Assembly (NCBI RefSeq): GCF_026571515.1 | Contig: NW_026856091.1 | Coordinates: 1-64,000 of the forward strand | DNA: 64,000 nucleotides | Direction: 5' to 3' | Origin: Ruditapes philippinarum | Taxonomy: Eukaryota | In this document: piece by piece, positions 30,183 through 53,517 of the stretch | Numbering within the stretch: position 1 is the stretch's first letter | Layout: each line of letters opens with the position of its first letter | The notes under the pieces: generated by a model | What the model was told of the DNA's origin: nothing | Seen by the model: the letters and a program-made list of their open reading frames with translations, nothing else | Database searches by the model: none | Program-made: the position numbers and the translations under genes

Positions 30183-32894
30183 TCACTTTTTTGTAGAAAA
30201 ATCAAAAGATGAATGAAAATATACAAATATATCATCAGGTTTGATATGAAATAGTTTATCTTGATCTTTAACAACATACTGTTTAGCATCATTTCCCTTA
30301 CTTCCAATAAATGGTGAGTCTTGTTCATCATCATTTAACTCTATCTCGCCATCATCTGTTATACAACATTTCAATACTTTCACATTTACAGTATGAGGAA
30401 TACTAGGAAGACTATCAACAAACTTTTGCCATGTTGTCAAAGTCATTGTCACATAATAAAGCTCAATGTCCTTTAAACTGTTCATCTGTAAAGGTGACTG
30501 TATTATATTGTTAGTTAACCTAAAATCATATAACCGAAGCATCCTGAGATTGTGTACTTTGACTAGACTTTCTCCTATCATTGTATGATATAAATGAGAT
30601 TTAAGGTCCCGGTCTGCATGTAATTCAAGCTCTTTTAATTTGTTAGATTTTCTGATGATTTCAAATATTTTCTTATAATTACATCTTTTCAAATGTGTAT
30701 ATCTAAATATTTCAAGGTTTGTAGTATCAACATCTTTCACACTAACAGCATCACACAAATAAAGGTACTTAAGACATCTTGATAAATTTACATCATGCTG
30801 TTTGAAACAATCACACCTAACTTCATGAAGATGTATTTGTTCAAGTTTACTGATTCCCTCAAGAAAATTACAAAATGTAGTAGTATCGTCATGACTCATT
30901 TTTATATAACTCATTCTTATTGCTACAAGATTTTTCATACGTGGTAGGTTTTTGACAACTGTTCTGCATACTGGAAAATAGGCAAGGGACAGAGATAGCG
31001 ATATTAATGTTAAAGTATTTTTTTTAATTATCTCTGAAGTGCATTTGTTAATCTCATCAATCATCTTTGTATAACTCTGTATAGTATTATCATTTTGTGT
31101 GCTTGAAAACAATTGGCGTTGAATTGCAGATTGGAATGTCATTTCAAGTTTTTCAAGATGTTGAAACATTGGCAAATATTTTATAAATATAACATTGTCT
31201 GTGTTGCTGTAATTTACACGAATAGACAGAACAGAGTCAGTAGCAATTTGTTTCAGATCAATTCTTGAATAAACATTATCACAGAACTGATTCAATTCAT
31301 CAATGATCAAATCTCCTAAATAAAATGCAGGAGAAGATGAGTCCTTACATTCTTCAATTAACGCAAACACAAGCTGATGAATATCAGTAAATAATATATT
31401 AATGTTTCTACTTTCAGAATCTGTATAAAATAAATCAGTTTGTGTATTTACAGTTCTCCTGTATTCCTTAACACGAGAGTCTTTTGACACAGTATCAAAT
31501 ATGAATTTTGAGACATGTGTTGCTAATTTGGGTTCTAGGCCACATAGCATAATCATGACACTTGACTGCTCTAAAATGTCATTTACTCTTATACATTTCA
31601 TACATTTCTGAAAAACGCCTTCAATAATCTCATAACAACTTTTTGCTAATTCATCATTTCCTGTACTGTTTAATGAAGCAATTTCTGTATTAAAATTGAT
31701 ACAAATATTCACTGCAGCCAGAAATTCTTGCATTGATTTGTGAATAAAAGAGAATAATGAGCTTGATGGTTCTGATACAGTAAAATTGGGACGTTCATCT
31801 TCTGTCATTATTCCAAGTTTCAAGCAGTTTTTCCTAACTTCATCTGAGATGTCTAGTTTATCCAACAAACAAATGTCAAATGCCAAGGATTTGTTCTTTG
31901 GACAATTAAACAGTGTCTTATAAGCCAATTGTGACATATCATAAATGAAATGGCGGTAAAATTGTAATTTGGTTTTATCTGCTAAATATTTAGGAAGATT
32001 AACTTCCTTTTTACCCTTGTCTCGACCATTTGTTTGTGCAGTTTTCATATCATTCCATGCAAAGAAAAGTTCCAACATGCCCGTGTAGATGGCAGCTCTT
32101 GAGGTTTTATCAAGTTTATCATCATACCATAGACAAATCAATTGTTGAAGTATAATTGGTACCTGTTTTAAACTTCCAAGGGATTTTTCTCTAAGCTTTG
32201 CCCTACAGTCTCTTGCGTCTTTATTAGCATGTTTTCTATTATTTAATTGTGAGACTGTCCTATTTACCATTTCCCTTTCACATTTAAAATCAAACCCTTT
32301 TAGTTTCAGTGATTGTTTAATATCAACACCAATTGATCGCAAAGTAAAAAATTTCCATGGACGTGAAGTAGTTACTATTGTGTACTCCTTAAATTTGCTA
32401 TGATCTGGGACATTTTCACAGGACCATTCATCTATGCCATCAAGCAAAATCATAACTCTAGAGGATTCCTTTTCAAGAAGTGTGCTTAAAATGTCCATTT
32501 GATAGCGTTTTTGAAGCATTATATCAATGTCAATGTCCTGATACTGTCTAAGAGGGATGTAAAATACAAATTCAAATTTCTTCATCACCTTTACACCCAT
32601 GAATTTTTGTTCATATGTTTTACTATCATAGTCAAGTTCCTCCTTGGTATAATTCTTGCCTTCAATTTCGTTTGTTTTTGTACCACACAATCCAGCCTGT
32701 TCCCTTTGAATTTGAAAACTAAATTCATCCCACATTTTTATCATTTCTTCATTCAATCCTCCATGTTTTTCTTTTGCACCTCCATTTTCTACATTGTCGC
32801 CCCCATGTTTCTCACTTTCACTTCTATGCTTCTCACGGCCAGCTCCATGTTCTTCATTGTCACCTTCATTTTCTTTATTGTTACGCCTATGTTT
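30183..32894 (-). CDS. NLR-like gene exon 5, distal frame: end of the repeat insert, NACHT C-terminal half, HD1/WHD/HD2 and degenerate LRRs
   Basis: Frame is open from 32894 to TGA at 30183. Motifs: FEFVFYIPLR, Walker B VMILLDGIDE (32427-32456), sensor-1 IVTTSRPW, VPIILQQLICLW, WHD motif FSFIHKSMQEFLAA, LRR-like HLEKLEM, KLEQIHL, KLKELEL, NLRMLRL, SLKDIEL. Confidence 0.93.
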   Translation of the reverse strand, partial: KHRRNNKENEGDNEEHGAGREKHRSESEKHGGDNVENGGAKEKHGGLNEEMIKMWDEFSFQIQREQAGLCGTKTNEIEGKNYTKEELDYDSKTYEQKFMGVKVMKKFEFVFYIPLRQYQDIDIDIMLQKRYQMDILSTLLEKESSRVMILLDGIDEWSCENVPDHSKFKEYTIVTTSRPWKFFTLRSIGVDIKQSLKLKGFDFKCEREMVNRTVSQLNNRKHANKDARDCRAKLREKSLGSLKQVPIILQQLICLWYDDKLDKTSRAAIYTGMLELFFAWNDMKTAQTNGRDKGKKEVNLPKYLADKTKLQFYRHFIYDMSQLAYKTLFNCPKNKSLAFDICLLDKLDISDEVRKNCLKLGIMTEDERPNFTVSEPSSSLFSFIHKSMQEFLAAVNICINFNTEIASLNSTGNDELAKSCYEIIEGVFQKCMKCIRVNDILEQSSVMIMLCGLEPKLATHVSKFIFDTVSKDSRVKEYRRTVNTQTDLFYTDSESRNINILFTDIHQLVFALIEECKDSSSPAFYLGDLIIDELNQFCDNVYSRIDLKQIATDSVLSIRVNYSNTDNVIFIKYLPMFQHLEKLEMTFQSAIQRQLFSSTQNDNTIQSYTKMIDEINKCTSEIIKKNTLTLISLSLSLAYFPVCRTVVKNLPRMKNLVAIRMSYIKMSHDDTTTFCNFLEGISKLEQIHLHEVRCDCFKQHDVNLSRCLKYLYLCDAVSVKDVDTTNLEIFRYTHLKRCNYKKIFEIIRKSNKLKELELHADRDLKSHLYHTMIGESLVKVHNLRMLRLYDFRLTNNIIQSPLQMNSLKDIELYYVTMTLTTWQKFVDSLPSIPHTVNVKVLKCCITDDGEIELNDDEQDSPFIGSKGNDAKQYVVKDQDKLFHIKPDDIFVYFHSSFDFSTKK

Positions 32895-35540
32895 TTAAAC
32901 ATCATTCTACTGCTTCCGCAGTGTCAACCCCCATCTTTTCTTCCCCCAAAATGTTTCCAAACAGCTCTTTGTGTCTTCTTTGCAAACATGTTTTTCATTG
33001 GCATTTTCCGATGTTAAACATCAGTCACTAGTCCTGTCACTGTCACACCCAGTTTTTCCCTTTGTCAACAACATTTTTCCAACAGTCAATTTCATGTTTC
33101 TCACTGTCATCTCCATGTTTTTCATTGTCATGTCCATGTTTGTCATTGTCACCTCCATGTCCTTCATTTTCACCTCCATAATCATCATTCTCACATCCAT
33201 GTTTCTCACTAACACCTCCATGTTCTTCACTGTTACCATCATGTCCTTCACTGTAACCTTCTTGTTCTTCCTTGTCACCTCCATGTTTTTCATTGTCACG
33301 TCCATGTTTCCCACTGTCAACTCCATGTTTTTCATTGTCACCTCCATGTTCTATGCTGTCACCTCCATGTTTTTCATTTTTACCTACTTGTTCTTCCTTG
33401 TCATCGCCATGTTTATTACCTTCATGTCCTTTATTGTCACCACCATGTTCTTCATTGGCACCCCCATGTTTTACACTGTCCCAAAAATGCTTTCCACTGT
33501 CAAAATTATGTTCTTTATTGTCACTTCTATGTTTCTCACTGTCATCTCCATGTTCTTCACTGTCACCATCAGGTTTTTCAGTGTTAATATCATGTCCTTC
33601 ACTGTAACCTTCTTGTTCTTCCTTGCCACTGCGATGTTTTTCAGTGTCAACTCCATGTTTGTCATTGTCACGTCCATGTTTCTCACTGTCACCTCCATTT
33701 TCTTCATTGTCACCTCCACGTTCTTCACTGTTAACTTCATGTTCGTAATTGTCACCTCCATTTCGTTCAGTGTCACATACATGCTTCTCACTGTCACATC
33801 CATGTTCTTCAATGTCACATCCATGTTCTTCATTGCGACTTACTTGTTCTTCCTTGTCACCGCGATGTTTCTCAATGTCACCTACATGTTCTTCATTGTC
33901 ACGTCCATGTTTCTCACTGTCACCTCCATGTTCTTTACTGTCACCTCCATGTTCTTCCTTGTCAACTCCATGTTCTTCACTGTCATGTAATTGTCCTTCC
34001 TTGTCACCGTCATGTTTCACATTTTCACCTCCATGTTCTTCACTGTCAGCTCCAGGTTTTACACTGTCATCTTTATGTTCTTCATTCTCACCTCTTTGTT
34101 TTTTATTCTCACCTCTATGTTCTTTACTGTCACCTTCATTTTCTTCACTGTCACCTACTTGTTCTTTCTTGTCACCGCTAGGTTTCTCAGCGCCACCGTC
34201 ATGTTCTTCATTTTCACTTCCATGTTCTGCATCGTCACCTCCATATTCTTCACTATCACTTCCTTTTTTTTCACTGTCACCTCCGAGTTCTTCACTGCCA
34301 CTCCCATGTTCTTCATTGCCACGTCCATGTTTTTCATTGTCACCTTCATGTCCTTCATTCTCACCAGCATGTTCATCATTGTCACCTACTTGTACTTCCT
34401 TGTCAGGTCCATGTTTCTCACTGTCACCTCCATGTTCTTCATTTTCAGGTCCATGTTCTTCATTGTCACGTCCATGTTTCTCACTGTCATCTCCATGTTT
34501 TTCACTGTCATCTCCATGTTTCTCACTGTCACCTCCATGTTCTTCATTTTCAGGTCCATGTTCTTCATTGTCACGTCCATGTTCTACATTGTCACCCTTA
34601 TGTGTTTCATTGTCACCTCTAAGTGCTTTATTGTCACCTCCATTATTGTATTTGTCACTTCCTTGTTCCTTAGTTACCTCTTCATTTACAACGTCAATTA
34701 CATGTTCTTTATGTTTGTCATTGCCTTCTTCATTTTCATTGCCACATCCATCCTTATTATTATTGCCACCTCCATCATTTTTGTCTTTGTTTTCTTTATT
34801 TTCAAAGTCTCCATCATGTTCTACATTTACCTTTTCATTTACAATGTCACCTTTATGTTTTTCATTCTTACCCTCATGTTTTTCAGTGTCACCTGCATGT
34901 TCTTCATTGTCACTTACTTGTTCTTCCTTGTCTGCGCCATGTTTCTCACTGTCACGTCCATGTTCTGCATTGTCAACTCCATGTTCTTCATTGTCACCTC
35001 CATTACCTTCATTGTCACATACTTGTTCTTCCATGTCACTGCGATGTTTCTCAATGTCACTTCCATGTTCTTCATTGTAACTTCCATGTTCTTCATTGTC
35101 ACGTCCATGTTCTTCATTGTCACCCCCATGTTCTTCAGTCTCACCAGCATGTTTTTCACTGTCACCTACTTGTTCTTCTTTGTCACGTTCATGTTTCTCA
35201 CTGTCACCTCCATGTTCTTCATTTTTTCCTCCAAGCTCTTCATTTTCACGTCCATGCTCTTCATTGTCACCTTTATGTTTTTCATTGTCACCTCCATGTG
35301 TTTCATTGTCGCCTCCATGTTCCTCAGTTACATCTTCATTTACAACGTTAATTACATGTTCTTTATGTTTTTCATTGCCTAGTTCATTTGCATTGCCACC
35401 TCCATTTTTTTCATTATTGCCACCTCCATTTTTTTCTTTGCTTTCTTTATTTTCAAAGTCTCCATAATGTTCCTCATTTACCTTTTCATTTGCAATGTCA
35501 CCTTTATGTTTTTTATTACCATCCTCATTTTCAATTTCAT
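32760..35540 (-). repeat. Coding 21-bp tandem repeat encoding (GGDNEEH/GxDSEKH)n, about 120-130 units
   Basis: The plus-strand unit TGTCACCTCCATGTTCTTCAT recurs throughout and translates to acidic Gly/His heptads in the NLR frame. Confidence 0.95.
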
Positions 35541-35849
35541 CTTTAAGTTTCTCACTGTGTGCCAAACACCAACAGTTGACTAGATATTTACAAAAACTAG
35601 TTTTTCCTGACCCTGCATCGCCAACAAGATATACAGATTTTTGGGGGATTCCGTTCTTTGTGAAGATTTCTGACATTGTTTTAACCTCCACCTCCTCTGT
35701 CTCACCCTTTTCTCCTTCTTTCTCGCTCGTTATTGTGGGTCTAATATAAATCTCACTAAAGCTACATTTTCCATGGTGTGGTTGTACAGGTGTTGTAGGA
35801 ACTTGCAGCAGGGTTTTGTGATACTGATCCATAAGCTTTTTCCTCATTG
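33043..35849 (-). CDS. NLR-like gene exon 5, proximal frame: pre-NACHT helix, Walker A and the repeat insert
   Basis: Acceptor TTAATTACAG at 35850-35851, phase 1 (G|CA = Ala). FSEIYIRP pre-NACHT motif, Walker A GDAGSGKT (35599-35622), then heptad repeats. The frame ends at TGA 33043-33045 in a garbled patch. Confidence 0.9.
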
Positions 35850-36634
35850 CTGTAATTAAGATACTTAATATTAAATTAAACTGACACAGAAAAAAAGTAA
35901 ATAATACAAAAAATTAGTATAGACCCGGATAAATTATCTCAAGCCTTAAACATACAATGTAAAAAAGAAAGACAACCGTTTATTCCATGTTCTCTTAACA
36001 TCAACAAAGTTCAATGTACTGCACAAAACACGAAAAATCAGTCAGATACTTTTTAAATATAATTCTATTTTTCTTTTCTTTAAATACTTAACATTACTTG
36101 TCAATCTATTGCGTTATTCTTTGTTTAAAATAATAATACACATATTAACAAAAGAAGCATTGCATTCAATGAACGCAACCCATTATTAAACACAATTACA
36201 AAGCTTATCCCTCGGTTTCGCTTCAGACGTGTTATGGAACTGATTCATGTTTATTGGTCACAAATCAAAACGAGTCAATCTAAATATAAATGTATTAACC
36301 GGAAGTTTACGAAAATATGTTCTTTAATCAGCGAACATGAAAAGTGTCCGTATATGTACGCTAACCAATCGCCGAAGACGATAAATATATAGATTATGCA
36401 GAAATGCATCAATGAATCACGTATTATGCAAACCTTACCTTACGTATTGTACATAGCCTGATGACGTATTACACATTTATTTAAGATGAATTGAAACTAA
36501 AAGTCATTTTGTATGAAGACACATTTAAAATCCAACCGCGTTTCGGGCTTACACTCGCGCTTTGGATTTTTGCAGGCCCAAATGCGATTTTACCTGCCTC
36601 TGGTATCGAGCGTGTGCCTTCTTTGCAGATTGCA

Positions 36635-39600
36635 GAATATAACATACCTGTTTAAGCCATTACATATATTGTATAAAATTCCTTATTAATGTTTTTCATA
36701 TCATATAAAACATATCTAATTTTGTTTTTTGATATTCTATATTACATACCTAATTTAGCCTTTCTTTATTTGAATAAAACACCTTAATTGGCATTTTAAT
36801 ATTTTATATAACATTACCGACTTAGTCTTTTCATATTTTATATATTAATATATTTGATTTAGCCTTTTAACATTTATATAACGAACATGATTAAGGCTTT
36901 TCATACTCTACAAAACAAACCTAATAAACGCATTTCATATTTTATATACTATGCCTGATTTTCATATTCTCCATGACATAATGATTTACAATTAGTCTTT
37001 TCACATTCAATAAATCATAGCCTATTCATAACCATTTAACATACCTGATTCAGTCGTTCTTTATTTTATTTAACATATTCTATATAACATGCATGACTTA
37101 GGCTTTTCATATTCTTTCATTATTTCACTGGATAAGCCTATTTATTTTTTAAAAAATGTACCTGACTTGGCTTTTTCATATTCTATATAGCAAACATGAT
37201 TAAGCGTTTTCATGTTCTTTATATTACACCTGATTTAGCCTTTTCATATTGTATATAACATGCATGACTTTGACTTTTCATATTCTTTTTTTACGTAAAT
37301 GATTACGCCTAATTACTTTCTGTAAAATATACCTGATATAGCCATCTTATACTTTATATAAATTACATGATTTAACCTTTTCAAATTCTATATAACATTC
37401 CTGATTGAGTCTTTTTTTTTTCTTTTTTAAGATGCCTGACTTAGGATTTTCATATTCTACATAACTTACCAGATTTAGCTTTTTCAAATTCTATATACTA
37501 TACATGATTTCGTCTTTTCATATATGATATAAATTACCAGATTTAGCAATTTCATGTTCTATAAAACATCCTGATTTAGCCATTTTCTACAAACCTGATT
37601 GTGGCTATTTATTTCTTTGAAAAAAACCTGAGTTAGCCATTTCAAATTCTATATATTAACATATCAAATTTAGCCTTTTCATATTCTATATAACATACGT
37701 GATAAAGCCTTTTCAAAATTTTTATAACATACCTGATTTGGCTTTTTCGTTTATTATGTAACTTGCCTAATTTATCCTTTTCATATGATATATTGTCACA
37801 AAGTAAACCATTTCATAAATGCTCAGAAGTGCTTTAAGTACTTTGATTTTTACATAATTCGTAAGTGCTCAGAAGTGCTCTCAGTACTTTGATTTTTGTA
37901 GTATTCTATTCATGCCGAACCTCAGTTTTATACTAAATACAATGTACATTATTGTATCATCTTTTTGTAAAATTCAGAGTTATCGAGTGAAATTATTTAT
38001 TTCAGTATTTTGATCTATTGCTTAAATTTCTTGGTATCATTTCAAGTATGTTGACATATTTTTCATAAAATTCGGTCCAGTAATAAGAAAGTTAGATTTT
38101 TGTGATAAAGTGTAAATTTATTTATGGTCTATTAATTTGATATTACAGGCCTGTATATTTTGTTATACATGCGTTCTGGAATGCAAAAAATCGTAAAAGT
38201 TATGTTTCACGCTTTCTACTCGGGGGAACTATGCATAATGTATATATTGAACGATTTTAAATCTTCTTTGGGTCTCACATTTAGACGTGTAAAGACGCAC
38301 AAGGTCATTATGACAGACCAATTTATTTTTGTTGTGTAAATTTGAAGCTTGCGCAAGGTAAGTTTTTCTTTTCTTCTTGTTTTATTTAGTAAATTTTTGT
38401 TATTTCAGAAGATCGTTATTCAGTTAATTTTTCCTTACATAATCGTTTTGTATTTTTTTTTTTTTTTTTTTGCATTTTTGACAGTATTTGTTTGTTCTCC
38501 AAACTTTCGTCTTCTGTAGAGTTAGGACTCTAGTGTTTCATTCATTACTTGAATATTGGTAATCTGTTTATTATCATTGATAGTTGTTGTTATGTATGGA
38601 AGGCCGTTAACGCATTATTTTATCATACATATATTTCATTTATATTTACTAAACTAAGTTTTCATGTTCTTGTTTAATACAGTTAGTATTTTTATAATTG
38701 AGTCTGCTGCAGATGTTTTTTATATAATTCTTATTTTTTTAAGTAATTTTCGTATCACTTCACATCATCATTATTTTTTTTTTGTACGAAATAATATGGA
38801 TTCGATTCAAGGATGGATTTTGTCGATGTTTAGGTGGCACCCGGTCTTGCTTCATGTTTTATATCTTACATCGTGCTACGATGTAATATCAACGTTGAAT
38901 TTACTTTACCGATGTGTATGGCGTTCCATAAGGAACATCATTTTTTTAGAAACTTTGTTTATAGAAATCCGACAAAGGTCCGGCTATGCCAAAGGGACAT
39001 ATTTATACCCTTATATTTGTGTACCATGGATATTTACCATGTTTTATATTTTGTAGCTTCTACTCGGAGGATTCACCTGCAATTTTGTATCACGCATGTG
39101 TTCAACATAGCGACGATAGTGGATATTGTGACGTAGCGACGCAGTCTTGGATCTACACTCTGTAGACAGTACAGAATCGATCTTTCTGCTTTGAATGGGC
39201 CACATCTGGAGATTGTGACGTAGAGACCCCACATCCACAGTCTTGGATCTACACTCTGTAGAATCAATCTTCTGCTTTGGATGGGTCACATCTCGAGCTT
39301 CAGTGTATTTTTTTTAGTTAAGTCACCGGGACAAAGTGCTATTCGACAGGACACGGAACTTTAATTTATTTTGTTTTTCTCTTTTCATTCATTGCTTATC
39401 ATTTAATTTCATTTATAAATATTCATTTATTTTTGTAAATATATATTTAAATAGTGTGTACTGAGTTGTGCTTTGTTTTTTTATGGTAGTTGTGATCAGC
39501 CTGTGTTCCATCGAAGTCCATAATGTGACATATATATCATACCTGATTTAGAATTTTCATATATTATATAACACACCTGACTGAGGCTTCCATAATCTAC

Positions 39601-40612
39601 TTTAAATGTCTAATTTAGCATTTCATTTTCTGTATGACATACCGGATTTCACATATTTTACTTTCTATATAACATACCTGATTAAGCCTTTTCATATTCG
39701 GTATAAATATACCTGATTTAGCATTTTATATTATATGTGGCATACCTAATTTAGCTTTTTCATATATTATATTACAGACCTGTTTAAGCCTTTCATAGTT
39801 TCTATAATATACCTTATTTAGACTTTTCATATTCTTTTTAAAATACCTGATTTAGCATTTTCCTACTTGATATAATGACCATAGTTAGCCTGTTATACCT
39901 TATTAGGTTTTTTATTATGGTATAAATAACACACCTGATTATTCCTTTTCATATTCTATATACCATACCTATCTTTATCTTTCTAAATTTTATATAAAAT
40001 AACTGATAATGACTTTTCATATTCTACATAACATGCATTACTTAGACTTTTCATATTATTTCATTACTTCACTGATTTAGGCTATCTGTTTTCTACAAAT
40101 AAACCTGACTTGGCTTTTTCATATTCCATATAGCATACATGATAAAGCGTTTTCATGTTCTATATAATACATCTGATTTAGCCTTTTCATATATATATTA
40201 TATAACATACCTTATGAAGCCTTTTCAAATTTTATATAACAAACCTGATTTAACCTTTTCATATATATATTATATAACATACCTGATGAAGCCTTTTCAA
40301 ATTTTATATAACAAACCTGATTTAACCTTTTTTATATATTATATAACATATTCTTTTAAAATATCTGATTTAGCCTTTTTATATTCTGTATACATATACC
40401 GTATTATTAAGCCTTTTACATATATTATATCAACTACATTCTATAAAACATACCTGATTTAGACTTTTCATATTTTGTAAAACATACCTGATTTAGCCTT
40501 TTCATATTATATACAACAAACCTGATTTAGATTTTTCATATTCTATATAACATACCTGATTTAGCCGTCTCATATTCTATATATTAACATACCTAATTTA
40601 GCCTTTTCATAT
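36635..40612. repeat. 34-bp minisatellite (ACATACCTGATTTAGCCTTTTCATATTCTATATA)n in NLR intron 4, interrupted at 37794-39530
   Basis: Period of 34 measured (40483, 40517, 40551); about 60 degenerate units. The last unit overlaps exon 4. Confidence 0.92.
37794..39530. mobile_element. Candidate solo LTR (~1.74 kb)
   Basis: TGTCACA...TGTGACA inverted termini and a 5-bp TATAT duplication (37789-37793, 39531-39535). Interrupts the 34-bp array; internal short direct repeats at ~39120-39290. Confidence 0.7.
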
Positions 40613-40662
40613 CTTAACTGTTTTTGTTGAGGAGAATCGTTTTCCTTGAGTCTTTTTATCTC
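40593..40662 (-). CDS. NLR-like gene exon 4 (EIKRLKENDSPQQKQLRYEKAKL + 1 nt)
   Basis: Acceptor TTATGTTGTAG, donor TAG|GTATGT, 70 nt, phase 0 to 1. It exactly bridges phase-0 exon 3 and phase-1 exon 5, giving YEKAKL-A-MRKKLMDQY. Confidence 0.8.
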
Positions 40663-40950
40663 CTACAACATAAATAATAATACAGGTAGTTTTATATCCA
40701 ATAATTTGCAAAAATTATTGTCTTTGGACAGTCCGTCTAACATATAGTGCCCCAATATATCTAATAAAATAAACATCAAATTGAATATATATTATAGAGT
40801 TTATTTTCTAAATTAAATTTGGAACTTTTATTGCTATAGATCCTAAGGAAATATTTCATTACAGCATTTTGTGAAAATCATACAATGTACAAAATTTTTA
40901 CTATAGAGTATTGAATGTTTCTACAAAATATTTGAATTGAAAGATAATCA

Positions 40951-43900
40951 AACAAGAGGTTCATAATAGCTCTAATATCGCTCCCCATGACAAGGTACAA
41001 GTTATTTGTAAACTATAAATGAAAGCTGATTTTACACTGATATCACAAAGTTCATATGCATTAGTATTTGGATCTGGAATAATGCATGCGTTTAATATTG
41101 ACTAGTTGCTTTTGGAAAAAAGTGCTATTAGATGTCACTGTTAGCTATACAAAATAAATGGGTTTTTTTTTGGGGGGGGGGGGTTGTTTGTTTTTTATTT
41201 ATACATTTGAGGAAAATCAATAACCCACCCGGGGCAAGGCCAATTTTGACACCCGGCTTTTTGTCAACAAACTTGAAAGACACTCATTAGAAGATGCTTT
41301 ATGCCAAATATCTAAGTTCTAGCCATTTGGCTTTTAAGGAAAATGTTTCTGGTTTTCTTTTTTATATTATTAAAAATTATTAAGAAANNNNNNNNNNNNN
41401 NNNNNNNNNNNNNNNNNNNNNNNNNNNNNNNNNNNNNNNNNNNNNNNNNNNNNNNNNNNNNNNNNNNNNNNNNNNNNNNNNNNNNNNNNNNNNNNNNNNN
41501 NNNNNNNNNNNNNNNNNNNNNNNNNNNNNNNNNNNNNNNNNNNNGGAAAATTAAAAGGAAAATCAATGACCCCCTGGGACGTAGCAAATTTTTACTCAAC
41601 AGCTTTTATTTGAACAAACTTTAAACACACCCAACACTAGAAGATTTTTTATAATATATATCGAAGCTCTAGGTCTTTAGGTATTTTCAAAAAAAGACTT
41701 TTTCTATTTTTTACTATATGAATTTGAAAAATTTGACCTCACAGCTTTTATGTGAACAAACTAAGTAGAGACCGACTAGAAGATTTTTTATGCTTAATAT
41801 CTAAGCTGTAAGTTTTGGGATGTTTTGAAAATATTATTTAAGTGTTTTCATTGCGTTGTCATGACAAGCAGAGTAGTGCATGGAATTCAATTATGTGAAC
41901 AATTTTCAAAAGTGACCGCCCAAGGAACAGTTCCGTATAGTTGCGATGAAATTTGCTTTGCGATTTATGAGGACATGTCGTTTAAAGTTAAACTTTATGG
42001 ACAGAAGGACGCTGGATGAAAAGCGATCACAGAATCTCACCCTGTCACTTTGAGCTAAAACGAGATTGCAGAATGTTGTTCCACCGCTTTCCCACAACAC
42101 TTCAAAGTTCAAATTAACATCTAAAATGTCCATATTGTCAAATTGTATAGCTGTTCATCAAAGAACAAGAAAGTATGTCATCTGTCAATCTCTATGTCAG
42201 CTGCATGCATGATATTAATATTCATTTTTTATCCAAGGCTGTGCACATTGTCCAAATTTCATTGCAGTACATAAACAGACAAGGTCAAAATTTGGAGTTA
42301 AGGGTTTAAGTAAAACCATCTGGATACAGGTCCATAAGACAATGTTTCATCTCAAATATCAACGCTGTAACTTTATCGTATTTAAAAGATTTAATTTCTG
42401 TTTGTACTTATGTACATAACAAAAATCAATGGCCTACGGATCGAGGCCAATTTTGATCACAGGGCATTACTTTGAACAATATTGGTCCACTTCACATGTT
42501 TTTCATGTAAAATATCCAACCTTTAGCCCTTGTCAGTTCAGAGATGAAGATTTTTTAAGTTTTTAACATATACATATCAGGAAAACCTATGCCCCTCGAG
42601 GCGGGGTCAATTTTGACACATAGGGGCAAAATTTGAACAACTTTCGTAAAGGACAAATAGATGATATTTTATAGCAAATACCAATGCTCTAAGCCTTGTA
42701 CCTTCAGACAAGAATATGTATTAAGTTTTTACTATGTACATATGAGGAGAACCTATGGCTCTCTAAGGAGGGGATAATGTTGACACAAGAGGCAAAATTT
42801 AAACAACTTTCAATAGTTAGAAAAGTAATAATCAAGGTCACGATGACCTAAATATCGCTCACCTGATTACCGAGGCTGAATATTAAAATTGTAAGCAATC
42901 AATGAAATAGTGCAAATCTTTCATTTTTTATTCTATTTTTTCCATATATGCTCTTATATGTATTGTTACCATTTTTACCTCAGATTACCCTTATTCAAAC
43001 CTAAACTTGATATCATACCATCAACTTTTCTGACCAATATTCAGGATATTTTGGCTAAAAGAGTAACCTCTTGAGTGATAGCAAAGCTTTTCCATTTTTT
43101 GTCTGTGTAAACTAGATTTGGACCATGGATGACCAATGTTCACTGCTTAACTAAAAGAACATCACAACAAACTTTGTGATACATTTTCATGATATTAGGG
43201 ATGAAAATATTACCGTTATATCTTCATTTTTTTTAAAGATTTTACTTTGTCAACAATTTTGACCCCAGGACTTATATTTGCATAATCTTAGAAGAGGTCT
43301 TCTGCACAATGTTTCATGCCAAACAACTTAGTTTTAGTATTTCTTAAATCACAGAAGATGAAAATTTAAAACCTTTTTTTACAACGTCTTTAAAAGGGAA
43401 AATCAATGAAACCTAGAGGGGGACCATTTTGCCCCCAAGTTTAAATTTTAAAAATATGGGGTAAGATCTACTACCAAATTTTTATGCCAAATACTTATCT
43501 CTATTTTTGTAAATTTCCCGGGAAGATTTTGTTTTTTTAATTTTCATTTTATGCAGAGAAGGCGTATCAATGACCCCTGGGGCGAGGTCAATATTGACCC
43601 AAAACCTTTAATTTGAAACGTTCTTGTAGAGTTTATGAGACAATGATATTGCTATACACAAACTATTTAGGCCTTGCAATTTAAAAGGAGAATCATTTTT
43701 AGTTTTTACATACCCATATGAGGAAAATCAATGACCCCCTAGGGCCAGGCCAATTCTGAGACCTAGTCCTATAATTTGAACATGAGGTGACGCTACACAC
43801 AAGATCTTTAAGCTCTAGACATGCACTTTCAGATATATTGTTTAAATGATGACGGACGAACGGACGCACTGGCACCAACTGTACTGACGGACGATGGACG

Positions 43901-50535: not shown

Positions 50536-50703
50536 CTCTTTTAGTTTGGACATCTGTGTTTCAAGTTTATTTGTGAGCACCTCAAATTCCTCTTTGGTGG
50601 GAGAATTTTCAGCCAATTTTTGAACTTTCGCCAATTCCTCCTTGATTTGCCTCAGGATTTCTTTAAAGTCTTCAGTGGTAACAATGAAATCTTTCTTCTT
50701 CAG
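50536..50703 (-). CDS. NLR-like gene exon 3, coiled-coil linker (LKKKDFIVTTEDFKEILRQIKEELAKVQ...MSKLKE)
   Basis: Acceptor TTATTTTTCATCAG, donor GAG|GTAAAA, 168 nt, phase 0 to 0; heptad-like charged/hydrophobic pattern. Confidence 0.85.
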
Positions 50704-52106
50704 CTGATGAAAAATAACAATTTTGTTACATTTTCAGAGAAGTATGTGTATCTGTGTGTTTTTTTTATATTTATATATTCTATACAACATATTTTAAATA
50801 AGGACAAAACTTTATTTTAAACTAATAATTTTATCTTAGAATAACCAATAAACAAATTAATAAAAAATAAATCAACAATATAATATTTTACACAATTGAA
50901 ATAATAAACAATTGAAGGTATTTAAATATAATTAGAGGCCGAATGACGAACGCAACACATGTGTTCAATCCCATGCGCGTGTCAAACTGTTCAGCGCCTC
51001 GTTAAATTTTCGAGATCATATCCACTCCTTTGCAATGACGTTTTGATTGTATTTGAGAGGTATGTCTGCAGATGCGTGTACATTTCCGATTTTCTTAACT
51101 AATTGGATACACACACTTTTTTTACTCGCTAAATAGAAATTATTTACTTTTTCAGAGTAATCGAATATCAATTTTGGTGACCGATATTTGGACATGCGAT
51201 CGAGCACTGGGTTAACCGGTTACTCATAGCCATCCCTAAAGATGATCTCAATTGCTCTATTATTTTATCTATAATACTTTTCTGAGGGCTTCTAAAATTT
51301 ACTTTTATAAGAGGGTATGTGGTATAGGTATCTAGCTATCGGCTTCTTATTTTCTTACTTCTGTTGATACATATATTTCAGTGTAACATGGAGTTCGAAT
51401 TTTAGGAGGTTCCGGAATTCATATAATACTTCTCTGTATCTTAGTTTCACACTAAATTCAAGGGTTTTACATGCTTGAAAGGTTGAGGTTCTAATAGGGG
51501 TCAAGATATATGGTCACTGCTAATTGGAAGATAAAAACATTTTGCAAAATCGTTTGGACTTCATAGTTTACAAGTACGAGAATTCAGAGGTATGAATTAT
51601 AAAGGTCTCAGCCTTGGTACTTTTGAAGATACAAATGTTTTGTAGGTTTAATCACCTCAGGTATAATAAACATTTACACCCTTTTACAATTTCAAGATCT
51701 TAGCAGACACATTTTAATTGATATTATCTAAAACTTTAACACACAATCGTTTGGAATTCAGAATTTTTGAAGTCCGGAATTTCAAAGGTATAAATCATAA
51801 AGAATTTCCAGACCCTGAATATTGTTCGGATTTCAAGAGTTTACGGGTATTAGAAATTTCGGACTTCGTATGTTACACTGTGCTTAGATGCTTTTTGTAA
51901 ATAATCAAATATGTTTTAGGTACATATGTATTTTATGCGACTTTATCAATTCACTTAAGGAAACTATTTTTTAATTTGACTACTATTTACCATTGTTAGC
52001 TATGTTACCTATATAATTTATTTTGTCCTTAATTTTGTTGTTTGTTATCTTAACAATCTTAAATTAACTGCATACAGATTTCAAACTTCAGAATATTTAC
52101 ACTTAC

Positions 52107-52265
52107 ATCTTGCAGTTTCGTCACCGCTATCTGAGTATCTGATCGTTGTAATAGCTCCTTACCATCTTGTAGAACTGCAATCATATCCTCAATATACATA
52201 TTTGCCTCACTTTCTTCTAATTCCATGCTGCTTGAGTGAAAAATAGTATTTCTATACTGACGCAC
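52107..52265 (-). CDS. NLR-like gene exon 2, HEPN motif exon (VRQYRNTIFHSSSMELEE...TKLQD)
   Basis: Acceptor CTCTATTCAATAG, donor GAT|GTAAGT, 159 nt, phase 0 to 0. RNTIFH at 52236-52253. Confidence 0.9.
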
Positions 52266-52935
52266 CTATTGAATAGAGAACACAGATTCAATATTTCTAT
52301 GCATAAATATTCAGTGCTCTGCAATCATAATTATTTTGTTGAAAATTGTTTAGGTAATTACCTACATATAAGATGTAATCATGAGTTATTTTTCATGTCT
52401 TATTTTTGTCATTCAATTTGAGAAAAAGACAAATTGTAAAATTTAATTTTGGGAAAAATATGCCAGCGTTCAAGATGTTAAAATGCTTTATGAACTCAAT
52501 AAATCTTATTGAAACTGCTCAGAAATTAAAAGATATCCGAAACGTCCAAAATGCTATTGCACACCAAATACAAAATACCTTTTCCTAGGAAATAACCGAT
52601 CTCAGGATCGGGAATTTGTTTTAGATTAGGAAAGAAAGAACACAATTTAGATTGAGAATAAGGCTTATATTTGGACCCATGAGATATGGGGAAAAGAACA
52701 TGCATACAAACAGTAAATATTAACCACAATTCTTGTGAATTGTTACAATAAAATGTTGCATCAAAAAAGATTGGTGATTTTTTTATACATTTGTTGTGAA
52801 TCATTAGAGTGTATATTACTTCATTACCTTAATAGTTAAATTTTCATTTTCAATTTTACTTTAATGCTGAATAAACAGCATTAACATTAAAATAGAGCTT
52901 ATAAAAGATAAATAAATTGTGTTTTAATGATTTAC

Positions 52936-53517
52936 CTTTGACAAAAGATTGTTTGTTCCTGTGACATTGCATCCAATGTGGCTATGAAAATACTGGTTAT
53001 TTATCAATACATGTAATAACCCAGTAGAATCAGTTGCACTAGCAGATTGCCTGTCCTCGTACCCTGGAGCATTTATAAAACATTTACAAATGCTCCAAGG
53101 GTCTATCGTCCACTGTTGAGCATCAGTGTTTTTCCAGTAAGGTGAAGGTGGTGAGGATGCATGCTGCTGCACAATATAGTCATAGATTGCGCCACAAATG
53201 TTGTTCGGACATGCAATTTTGACCTTAAGAAAGCAACAGCTGCATTTTACTTGCCCAAAGGGACAAACCTTGTTTCTAGCATTCCCAAGATCTGGCTTAT
53301 GATCTGGCTTAAGAGTTTCTACTCGACAGCTGCCACACGTCACAGTTGATGGTAATGATTTTTTTGTAGACCTAATATTTTGTAAGATATCCTTATGTTG
53401 TTGATAAGCAATGTCATTACAAAATGGTGTGAGTCCTTCTTTTAAATATCTAAGTCCTAAACCAGCCTTTACCCACTGTCTGTATTTGTCATTCTCTAAC
53501 TGAAGTTGATGTGCCAT
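52936..53517 (-). CDS. NLR-like gene first coding exon, DUF4559/CXorf38-like N-terminal domain
   Basis: Acceptor at 53533-53534, ATG at 53517, 194 codons, donor AAG|GTAAAT. Motifs YRQWVKAGLGLRYLKEGLTPFC, Cys cluster, WKNTDAQQWTIDPWSICKCFI, DSTGLLHVLIN. The acceptor implies an upstream non-coding exon, which was not located. Confidence 0.9.

What the first reader, a model, noticed from the sequence alone, without database searches (positions are those of the whole stretch)
36635..40662. Exon-intron junction amplified into a tandem array of about 60 splice-donor copies
Seen: on the coding strand the 34-bp unit reads TATATAGAATATGAAAAGGCTAAATCAG|GTATGT. Its terminal copy is the 3' end of exon 4 (TATGAAAAGGCTAAATTAG, YEKAKL) plus the donor at 40591-40592. 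The intron therefore begins with dozens of near-consensus 5' splice sites. Reading past the first donor meets an in-frame TGA at 40570-40572, before the second donor (40554-40555), so any distal donor gives a premature stop and a likely NMD substrate. Inference: either the junction seeded the satellite or a satellite unit was exonised. The array could act as a copy-number-dependent splicing dampener or U1 sink on a potentially toxic receptor, or yield a short HEPN/coiled-coil isoform.
Basis: partly seen in the sequence, partly recalled or inferred. Interest (0 to 1): 0.78.

Follow-up and report, generated by a model that had tools for sequence, protein, structure and literature searches.

The report
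Splice-junction minisatellite in clam immune genes
A 34-base piece spanning the end of a small exon and the start of the next intron has been copied in tandem many times inside a clam immune-receptor-like gene and most of its sister genes; repeats of this kind are already known and this one looks like a passenger rather than a splicing switch.

Summary
The array is real. A 34-bp unit on the minus strand fills about 66 unit-lengths at 36642-40620, and its first copy is the end of exon 4 plus the donor. A 1.7-kb dispersed repeat splits it. Only 8 of 41 recognised units keep CAG|GTATGT, so "about 60 donors" is overstated.

It is not unique to this gene. About 81 sister copies of exon 4 exist, and 31 of 35 inspected carry the same array at the same offset. 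The satellite occurs nowhere else that I could check: 52 of 53 loci lie in this family's intron 4.

Array-less sisters have a homologous exon end, so the junction seeded the satellite. Donor columns are no better conserved than the other columns.

The kind is known. It matches "mirage" minisatellites in amphioxus and the boundary minisatellites of human F7, 6-16 and CBS, where the most upstream donor is used. The scan has noted other junction minisatellites in this genome (s1-808180, s1-803737, s1-813829).

One unexpected result: exon-4 type disagrees with the trees of both flanks, so it behaves as an exchanged cassette.

The parts
52933..53517 (-). Coding exon 1 (N-terminal domain, Pfam DUF4559), placed by homology to RefSeq sister proteins
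   Evidence: tblastn of P0009 and P0017 residues 1-193, 81-82% identity. Pfam PF15112 E 1.3e-08, 35.1 bits against a cut-off of 27.
52104..52265 (-). Coding exon 2. It holds RNTIFH; reading this as an Rx4H (HEPN-like) motif rests on recall.
   Evidence: tblastn of P0009 residues 193-246, 81% identity. Weak PF15112 match, E 0.009.
50536..50703 (-). Coding exon 3 (coiled-coil-like stretch ending ...QMSKLKE)
   Evidence: tblastn of P0009 and P0017 residues 246-294, 61-70% identity.
40593..40662 (-). Exon 4, 70 nt, EIKRLKENDSPQQKQLRYEKAKL plus one base. Its last 28 bases are the start of the first repeat unit.
   Evidence: Sequence read. Conserved with its splice sites in 14 of 14 aligned loci; the only length change is an in-frame 3-nt deletion. 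tblastn of P0009 residues 291-312, 86% identity.
40591..40592 (-). Authentic (most upstream) donor GT, context TTAG|GTATGT
   Evidence: RefSeq sister proteins join exon 4 directly to exon 5.
40570..40572 (-). In-frame TGA met when reading past the first donor, upstream of every distal donor
   Evidence: codons counted by hand.
39537..40620 (-). Proximal block of the 34-bp array (about 32 unit-lengths)
37795..39536 (-). Inserted dispersed repeat of about 1.7 kb, probably a non-autonomous transposable element, splitting the array
   Evidence: Own-genome search: 474 candidates, 40 scored, full-length copies at 82-88% identity on many contigs. No clear long terminal inverted repeats.
36642..37794 (-). 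Distal block of the 34-bp array (about 34 unit-lengths, more decayed).
35850..36641 (-). Non-repeat 3' part of intron 4, with acceptor ...ttaattacag|
   Evidence: About 210-240 nt are shared at 74-79% identity with three sister loci.
33043..35849 (-). Start of exon 5: P-loop GDAGSGKT of the NACHT module, followed by the long acidic heptad repeat
   Evidence: ORF list. Weak Pfam NACHT match, E 0.0052, below the cut-off. Sister proteins carry PF05729.

Best explanation
This is a boundary-spanning ("mirage"-type) minisatellite.

Origin. In an ancestor of one subfamily of clam DUF4559-NACHT genes, a 34-bp segment was duplicated in tandem. It comprised the last 20 or so bases of exon 4 and the first 14 or so bases of intron 4. 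The duplication was then amplified by slippage or unequal exchange. The array was inherited by, or copied into, most of the roughly 80 sister genes that have this exon-4 type.

Turnover. Each array now evolves on its own. Some were recently re-amplified. The one in this window is old, decayed and split by a transposon.

Splicing. Splicing uses the most upstream donor, the one attached to the exon, as shown experimentally for the human F7 minisatellite. Distal copies are occasional cryptic donors. Their use adds a multiple of 34 bases and meets a stop codon, so the product is unproductive.

Shown here: the anatomy, the family-wide distribution, the direction of origin and the absence of extra constraint on the donor columns.

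Inferred: which donor is used in this particular gene, and that the array has no regulatory role.
For: Anatomy:
- The first unit straddles the exon end.

Family-wide distribution:
- The exon-4 core occurs 81 times in the genome, against 2 for the reversed control.
- I inspected 35 type-A loci downstream of exon 4. Of these, 31 have at least 2 units by scan, always starting at the same offset in the exon. One more has a second unit visible by eye.
- Of the 35, 20 were chosen from loci with no listed exact unit. Even among those, 16 of 20 have arrays.

Private to the family:
- The first 100 listed matches of the 26-mer are all exact and fall in 53 distinct loci.
- 52 of the 53 have the exon-4 core just upstream and/or an exon-5 homologue within 8.3 kb downstream on the same strand.

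Direction of origin:
- Type-B sister genes L025 and L027 have a homologous exon 4 with a homologous coding end, introns of 1.45 and 0.29 kb, and 0 units.

No selection visible on the donors:
- Over 402 units, columns G29 and T30 match the consensus in 0.87 and 0.89 of units, against a mean of 0.89 for all columns.
- The best-kept columns are A/T runs.

Independent turnover:
- Within-locus unit distance is 9.75 of 34 in the window, against 2.9-3.4 in L001, L008 and L021.
- The nearest neighbour lies in the same locus for 26% of units, against 8% expected.

Donor choice:
- At least 20 RefSeq sister proteins read ...YEKAKS|EWREKLIEQY, which is first donor joined to exon 5.

Literature:
- PMC1557585 (abstract and passages read). 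In human F7 IVS7 the first element of a 37-bp minisatellite spans the exon-intron boundary, and only the most upstream donor is used. In 6-16 and CBS two proximal pseudo-sites are also used.
- PMC3087553 (passages read). [quoted passage not shown]
Against: - Use of exon 4 and of its first donor in this gene rests on conservation and on computed RefSeq models of sister genes.
- Two RefSeq "isoform X2" models start inside repeat units. P0008 uses donor 2, 34 nt into the array. P0014 uses a donor about 272 nt in. Distal donors may therefore be used more than occasionally. However, short spliced reads cannot tell identical donors apart, so these models may be alignment artefacts.
- Arrays are retained in most type-A loci, and the same consensus is re-amplified in different sisters (13 perfect units in L001, 8 in L009). 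This would also fit some benefit.
- Exon-4 type is scattered on the trees of both flanks. Simple vertical inheritance does not explain that.
- Three type-A loci have no array within about 700 nt. I did not establish whether that state is ancestral or secondary.
Confidence: 0.72

Rival explanations
1. Regulated unproductive splicing or U1 sink. The reiterated donors are kept because they bind U1 snRNP or divert some transcripts to stop-containing forms, tuning the output of a costly immune receptor in proportion to copy number.
For: - Every distal donor gives a premature stop.
- Two RefSeq X2 models use repeat-borne donors.
- Arrays persist in 31 of 35 type-A loci.
- Several sisters carry runs of perfect CAG|GTATGT units: 26 of 30 units in L001 and 18 of 19 in L021.
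Against: - Donor columns are no better conserved than the rest of the unit.
- In this window only 8 of 41 units keep the full donor, and the array is split by a transposon.
- Unit number ranges from 11 to 60 in the loci that include the exon-4 end of the array, with no sign of a preferred size (30 in L001, whose array is also split by non-repeat DNA).
- In human F7 identical downstream donors stay silent.
- The X2 models may be read-mapping artefacts.
Confidence: 0.12
2. Recombination cassette. The minisatellite is a hotspot for gene conversion or unequal exchange, and exon 4 type A together with its array has been copied from sister to sister.
For: - Exon-4 type needs 7 changes on the exon-5 tree (at least 4 forced by starred branches; AU p 2.5e-06).
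- It needs 5 changes among 16 rows on the exons 1-3 tree, no fewer than shuffled labels (AU p 7.9e-07).
- The exon-5 class fits the exons 1-3 tree with 1-2 changes.
- The last 70-120 nt of intron 4 go with the exon-5 type, so exchange points lie inside intron 4.
- That minisatellites are associated with conversion hotspots is recalled knowledge, not checked here.
Against: - A causal role for the array is not shown. The same pattern would arise from ordinary short conversion tracts over a 70-nt exon.
- I named the groups after seeing the junction listing, and the AU test on exon 5 was run after I had seen a quick tree.
- Only 16 and 27 RefSeq models were used, and some models may be chimeric.
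- Exon 4 was not located for the type-B genes on C15067 and C14751.
Confidence: 0.12
3. Exonised satellite or transposon-borne satellite. A pre-existing dispersed satellite landed in the intron, and one unit was recruited as the end of exon 4.
For: In bivalves many short satellite arrays are scattered through the genome and carried by Helentron-type elements. This rests on the titles and abstract starts of PMC7492417 and PMC8268682 in the listing.
Against: - The unit occurs only beside this family's exon 4 (52 of 53 loci).
- Homology upstream of exon 4 stops 15-59 nt into intron 3, with no element ends.
- Array-less sisters have a homologous coding exon end.
Confidence: 0.03

Closest known systems
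Human F7 intron 7 minisatellite (37 bp, 5-9 copies), with the 6-16/IFI6, CBS, LAMIN B2 and PDGF minisatellites listed in the same paper (PMC1557585, passages read)
   Same: The first monomer spans an exon-intron boundary, so the authentic donor is followed by reiterated donor copies. In F7, LAMIN B2 and PDGF only the most upstream (authentic) donor is used. In 6-16 and CBS two proximal pseudo-sites are used as well, which parallels the clam X2 model that uses donor 2.
   Different: The clam array is longer (11-60 recognised units per locus) and more decayed. It is shared by dozens of sister genes rather than being a polymorphism of a single gene. Donor choice has not been measured in the clam.
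"Mirage" minisatellites of amphioxus (Adh3 and globin genes; PMC3087553, passages read)
   Same: Tandem duplications of an exon-intron boundary in an invertebrate. Units carry AG/GT signals, regular splicing is not disturbed, and the arrays show concerted evolution and length instability.
   Different: The amphioxus examples have 3-6 units of 150-160 bp in the globins and units of 10-72 bp in Adh3. Spread through a large gene family was not described in the passages I read.
Other splice-junction minisatellites noted by this scan in the same genome (s1-808180, s1-803737, s1-813829)
   Same: Same genome and the same kind of repeat made from a splice junction. One follow-up found that the assembled mRNAs skip the array.
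   Different: Different genes, and one involves the acceptor side. These are AI notes that I did not test.
Zebrafish NLR-B30.2 family (PMC4852459, passages read)
   Same: A large NACHT family in which gene conversion acts differently on different parts of the gene, and N-terminal variants are not tied to the NACHT groups.
   Different: No boundary minisatellite is described in the passages I read. The comparison bears only on the cassette-like behaviour of exon 4.

Membership tests
Boundary-spanning ("mirage") minisatellite | Tandem repeat whose first unit contains the end of an exon and the start of the following intron | tested here: met
   The unit at 40620-40587 covers the last 28 nt of exon 4 and the first 6 nt of the intron. 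The offset is the same in 14 of 14 aligned loci.
Boundary-spanning ("mirage") minisatellite | The splice-site sequence is reiterated in the intron | tested here: met
   In the window, 8 of 41 units keep CAG|GTATGT and 32 of 41 keep GT. In L001, 26 of 30 units keep CAG|GTATGT.
Boundary-spanning ("mirage") minisatellite | Normal mRNA uses the authentic, most upstream site | tested here: inconclusive
   At least 20 RefSeq sister proteins join the exon-4 end to exon 5, and two X2 models use distal donors. These are computed models.
Boundary-spanning ("mirage") minisatellite | Length instability and concerted evolution of units | tested here: met
   Recognised unit numbers are 11-60 in the loci that include the exon-4 end of the array. 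Within-locus distances range from 2.9 to 9.75 of 34. The nearest neighbour lies in the same locus for 26% of units against 8% expected. Allelic variation was not tested.
Transposon-borne dispersed satellite (bivalve Helentron-type) | Arrays scattered over unrelated places and flanked by element sequence | tested here: not met
   52 of 53 loci with exact units lie in intron 4 of this family. No shared flank extends beyond 15-59 nt upstream of exon 4.
Conserved unproductive-splicing (poison) sites | Stop-introducing splice sites kept under purifying selection | tested here: not met
   Donor columns are conserved at 0.87-0.89 against a mean of 0.89 over 402 units. The test covers sisters within one genome only.
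NACHT (NLR-like) gene | NACHT NTPase domain recognised by Pfam | tested here: inconclusive
   For the window's exon-5 start, PF05729 scores E 0.0052 and 17.1 bits, below the cut-off of 26.7. Sister proteins carry precomputed PF05729. The C-terminal ORF has no Pfam match.

The most novel reading that the evidence does not exclude
Exon 4 type A and its junction-born minisatellite form a cassette that has been copied repeatedly between sister genes. The array acts as the initiator of gene conversion or unequal exchange. On this reading, a repeat born from a splice site drives mosaic evolution at the hinge between the N-terminal effector module and the NACHT module of an expanded immune-receptor family.
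Probability: 0.15. Interest if true: 0.65.

Novelty: new member of a known kind. Interest (0 to 1): 0.36.

Why it matters
This corrects an attractive reading. The array is not a designed bank of 60 donors. It is a large, old example of a known kind of repeat.

Two points may interest specialists:
- A junction-derived minisatellite has been carried through an expansion to about 80 gene copies. The result is a natural series of introns holding from 1 to dozens of identical donors. That series would suit a test, outside mammals, of the "most upstream donor wins" rule established on human F7.
- The small exon attached to the array does not follow the history of either flank. This hints that such repeats may influence how immune gene families become mosaics.

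There is also a practical point for annotators. Spliced short reads cannot be placed among identical donors, so isoforms that start in such arrays need long-read support.

Tried and rejected
- RNA evidence. I looked for runs (20 runs of the same organism hold exon-5 words, and their RNA nature is only guessed). I then asked read laying for window 35400-40800 on four of them.
- My first fetch of sister loci was cut to 10 kb per locus. As a result 11 minus-strand loci missed exon 4. They served only for exon 5 and the ends of arrays.
- Terminal inverted repeats of the inserted element: none convincing. Its class is left open.
- Exon 4 of the type-B genes on C15067 and C14751: not found within 5 kb upstream of exon 5. 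Their intron 4 is therefore unknown beyond the fact that it holds no unit in those 5 kb.
- Recursive splicing at CAG|GT. I considered it and dropped it on reading the unit: the bases before the AG are purine-rich (GAAAAGGCTAAATCAG) with no pyrimidine tract. This is inference only.
- Mutually exclusive exons 4A and 4B in one gene. I considered and rejected it for L025 and L027, where no type-A exon or unit lies in the 3.3 kb fetched.
- Literature. Four searches and one for "mirage" gave no paper describing this clam satellite or a junction minisatellite shared by a gene family. Absence from these searches is all I can claim. Supplements were not opened.
Exons were searched and aligned one by one.
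Full report
**What is there.** On the minus strand the window holds a gene that I placed exon by exon, by homology to RefSeq proteins of Ruditapes philippinarum (names as given by the source).
- Exon 1 is 53517-52933 (Pfam DUF4559; E 1.3e-08).
- Exon 2 is 52265-52104.
- Exon 3 is 50703-50536.
- Exon 4 is 40662-40593.
- Exon 5 starts at 35849 and holds a P-loop followed by a long acidic heptad repeat.

- Exon 4 follows ...tgttgtag| and ends TATGAAAAGGCTAAATTAG.
- The donor GT is at 40592-40591.
- Reading on in frame meets TGA at 40572-40570.
- The second donor GT is at 40555-40554.
- The acceptor AG is at 35851-35850.

**The array.**
- Tandem Repeats Finder reports period 34 at 39531-40612 (31.9 copies) and at 37074-37793 (21.4 copies), with only 61-62% matches. 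It also reports local higher-order repeats of 72, 82, 103 and 171 bp.
That is about 66 unit-lengths in two blocks.
- Between the blocks, 37795-39536 is a dispersed repeat. The own-genome search gave 474 candidates and scored 40, with full-length copies at 82-88% identity on many contigs. A transposable element therefore split the array.
- Intron 4 is 4,743 nt: 1,056 nt of array, 1,742 nt of insert, 1,153 nt of array and 792 nt of non-repeat DNA.
- The units are decayed. They average 5.8 mismatches to the consensus and 9.75 of 34 differences between units.
- Of the 41 units, 32 keep GT at the donor position, 11 fit AG|GTRNGT and 8 keep CAG|GTATGT.
- CAGGTATGT occurs 8 times in the array and nowhere else on that strand of the window.

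**It is a family feature, not a feature of this gene.**
- A 563-nt query (exon 4 plus the array start) matched about 40 other contigs at 70-83% identity. Many matches start at query base 1.
- I fetched 24 loci. In all 13 that include the exon-4 region, exon 4 and 15-59 nt of intron 3 are conserved. The other 11 were cut short by my own choice of coordinates.
- An alignment of 14 loci shows the same acceptor, a 70-nt exon whose only length change is an in-frame 3-nt deletion, and the donor AAATCAG|GTATGT. The array starts at the same offset inside the exon in each locus.
- The exon-4 core occurs 81 times in the genome at up to 3 mismatches, against 2 for the control.
- I then fetched 20 further core-bearing loci, chosen because no exact unit was listed for them. 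Of these, 16 have 2-15 units in the first 700 nt. One more has a second unit visible by eye. Three (L047, L049, L050) have only the exon's own copy.
- Adding L052, 31 of 35 inspected type-A loci carry the array by scan.

**The satellite is private to this family.**
- The 26-base core has 825 matches at up to 2 mismatches, and the reversed control has 0.
- The first 100 listed matches are all exact and fall in 53 distinct loci.
- I cross-checked them by hand against the exon-4 core list, the exon-5 lists and two extra fetches.
- 52 of the 53 have the exon-4 core just upstream and/or an exon-5 homologue no more than 8.3 kb downstream on the same strand.
- The remaining one (C1969) sits at a contig end.

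This rejects a transposon-borne or general satellite.

**Which came first.** Sister genes with a different exon-4 type exist. Type A reads EIKRLKVEDSPQQKQLEYEKAKS and type B reads E(M/I)AKIKTETSSGQSQ..Y(D/E)Q(A/T)KL. The two types have the same length and are homologous along their whole length.
- In two type-B loci, exon 4 ends ...GAGAAGGCCAAATTAG|GTGAGC (L027) and ...GAGCAAACCAAGTTAG|GTGAGT (L025).
- Their introns are 0.29 and 1.45 kb, and they hold no unit at all.
- The coding end of the exon therefore predates the array.
- In several sisters the exon-terminal copy equals the array consensus exactly. The window's copy has one change (TCAG to TTAG, Ser to Leu).

**Is there a sign of function?** I pooled 402 units from 16 loci.
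- The two donor bases match the consensus in 0.87 and 0.89 of units. The mean over all 34 columns is 0.89.
- The best-kept columns are A/T runs, and the worst include two G columns and a T column.
- Copy number shows no preferred value. Recognised units number 11-60 in the loci that include the exon-4 end of the array.
- Some arrays were recently re-amplified: 13 perfect units in L001, and within-locus distances of 2.9-3.4 in L001, L008 and L021. Others, like the window's, are relics.

This is what a neutral minisatellite looks like. It gives no support to selection on the donors.

**Donor choice.**
- At least 20 RefSeq sister proteins read ...YEKAKS|EWREKLIEQYHKTLLQVP. That is the first donor joined to exon 5.
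- Two "isoform X2" models begin with peptides that are translations of repeat units. P0008 starts at the ATG inside exon 4, reads through donor 1 and ends at donor 2, 34 nt later (mapped uniquely in L021). P0014 maps about 272 nt into the array of L046.
- Because 34 is 1 mod 3, a shift of one unit brings the +1 frame ATG into frame with exon 5. In the window that +1 ORF is closed by TAG at 40595-40593.
- These are computed models. Spliced short reads cannot be assigned among identical donors, so they may be artefacts.

**Comparison with what is known.**
- PMC1557585 (abstract and passages) describes the human F7 intron 7 minisatellite, whose first 37-bp element spans the exon 7 boundary. The downstream donors are functional but silent, because the most upstream one is always chosen.
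- The same paper lists 6-16 (25 pseudo-sites, with the two most proximal ones used as well), CBS, LAMIN B2 and PDGF.
- PMC3087553 (passages) describes "mirages" in amphioxus: minisatellite-like tandem duplications of exon-intron boundaries that do not disturb regular splicing and that evolve in concert.
- Earlier notes of this scan report other junction minisatellites in the same genome (s1-808180, s1-803737, s1-813829). One of them led me to the term "mirage".

The kind is therefore known. This is a new and unusually large member. What is unusual is its spread through a gene family.

**An unexpected side result.**
- Exon-4 type does not follow either flank. On a tree of the exon-5 part of 31 RefSeq proteins, type A needs 7 changes. 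At least 4 are forced by starred branches, and none of 200 bootstrap trees has a single change. Holding type A together costs 445.7 log-likelihood units (AU p 2.5e-06).
- On a tree of exons 1-3 (16 proteins), type A needs 5 changes, no fewer than shuffled labels (AU p 7.9e-07).
- By contrast, the exon-5 class fits the exons 1-3 tree with 1-2 changes.
- The last 70-120 nt of intron 4 go with the exon-5 type.
- So exon 4, with its array where it is type A, behaves as a small cassette exchanged among sisters. This resembles the part-wise gene conversion described for zebrafish NLR genes (PMC4852459, passages).
- Whether the array causes this is not shown.
- Caveats: I defined the groups from the junction listing and had seen a quick tree before the first AU test. 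The rows are computed gene models. Proteins without a recognisable junction motif (12 of 43) were left out, as were rows with fewer than 250 N-terminal residues or an exon 4 of neither type.

**Verdict.** The origin "junction seeded the satellite" is supported. The regulatory reading is unsupported but untested at the RNA level. This is a new member of a known kind, of moderate interest.

Noticed in passing
window 32756-33050, minus strand: The long exon-5 reading frame changes frame here. The ORF 35847-33043 ends at a stop, and homology to sister proteins continues from about 32894 in another frame. This means a frameshift, a short intron inside the heptad repeat, or an assembly slip. It bears on whether this copy is intact.
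   Followed up: no
window 33043-35540, minus strand: About 900 residues of acidic His/Gly 7-residue repeats (21-bp period) sit just after the P-loop. This was already noted by the scan as s1-803767.
   Followed up: no
window 37795-39536: A dispersed repeat of about 1.7 kb with hundreds of genomic candidates. Its ends read TGTCACA... and ...TGTGACA by eye, and no long inverted repeats were found. Its class is unknown.
   Followed up: partly
L021 (C10336) and L046 (C12272): RefSeq isoform X2 proteins P0008 and P0014 have N-termini translated from repeat units. The models imply use of donor 2 and of a donor about 272 nt into the array. They may be artefacts of mapping short reads among identical donors.
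   Followed up: partly
G000:C989:15986-16259: Two exact copies of the exon-4 core lie 251 nt apart on the same strand. This suggests that in this sister gene the whole exon was duplicated within the repeat.
   Followed up: no
L047, L049, L050 (C788, C2384, C15388): These type-A exon-4 copies have the donor followed directly by a shared non-repeat sequence (gtatgttatt.tctcccc...) and no further units in about 700 nt. This is either the state before amplification or a shared insertion.
   Followed up: partly
RefSeq sister proteins P0001-P0031: Exon-4 type (A or B) is scattered on the trees of both the upstream exons and exon 5, while those two parts agree with each other.
   Followed up: yes
window 41388-41544: A run of N lies in intron 3. 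I left it as it is.
   Followed up: no
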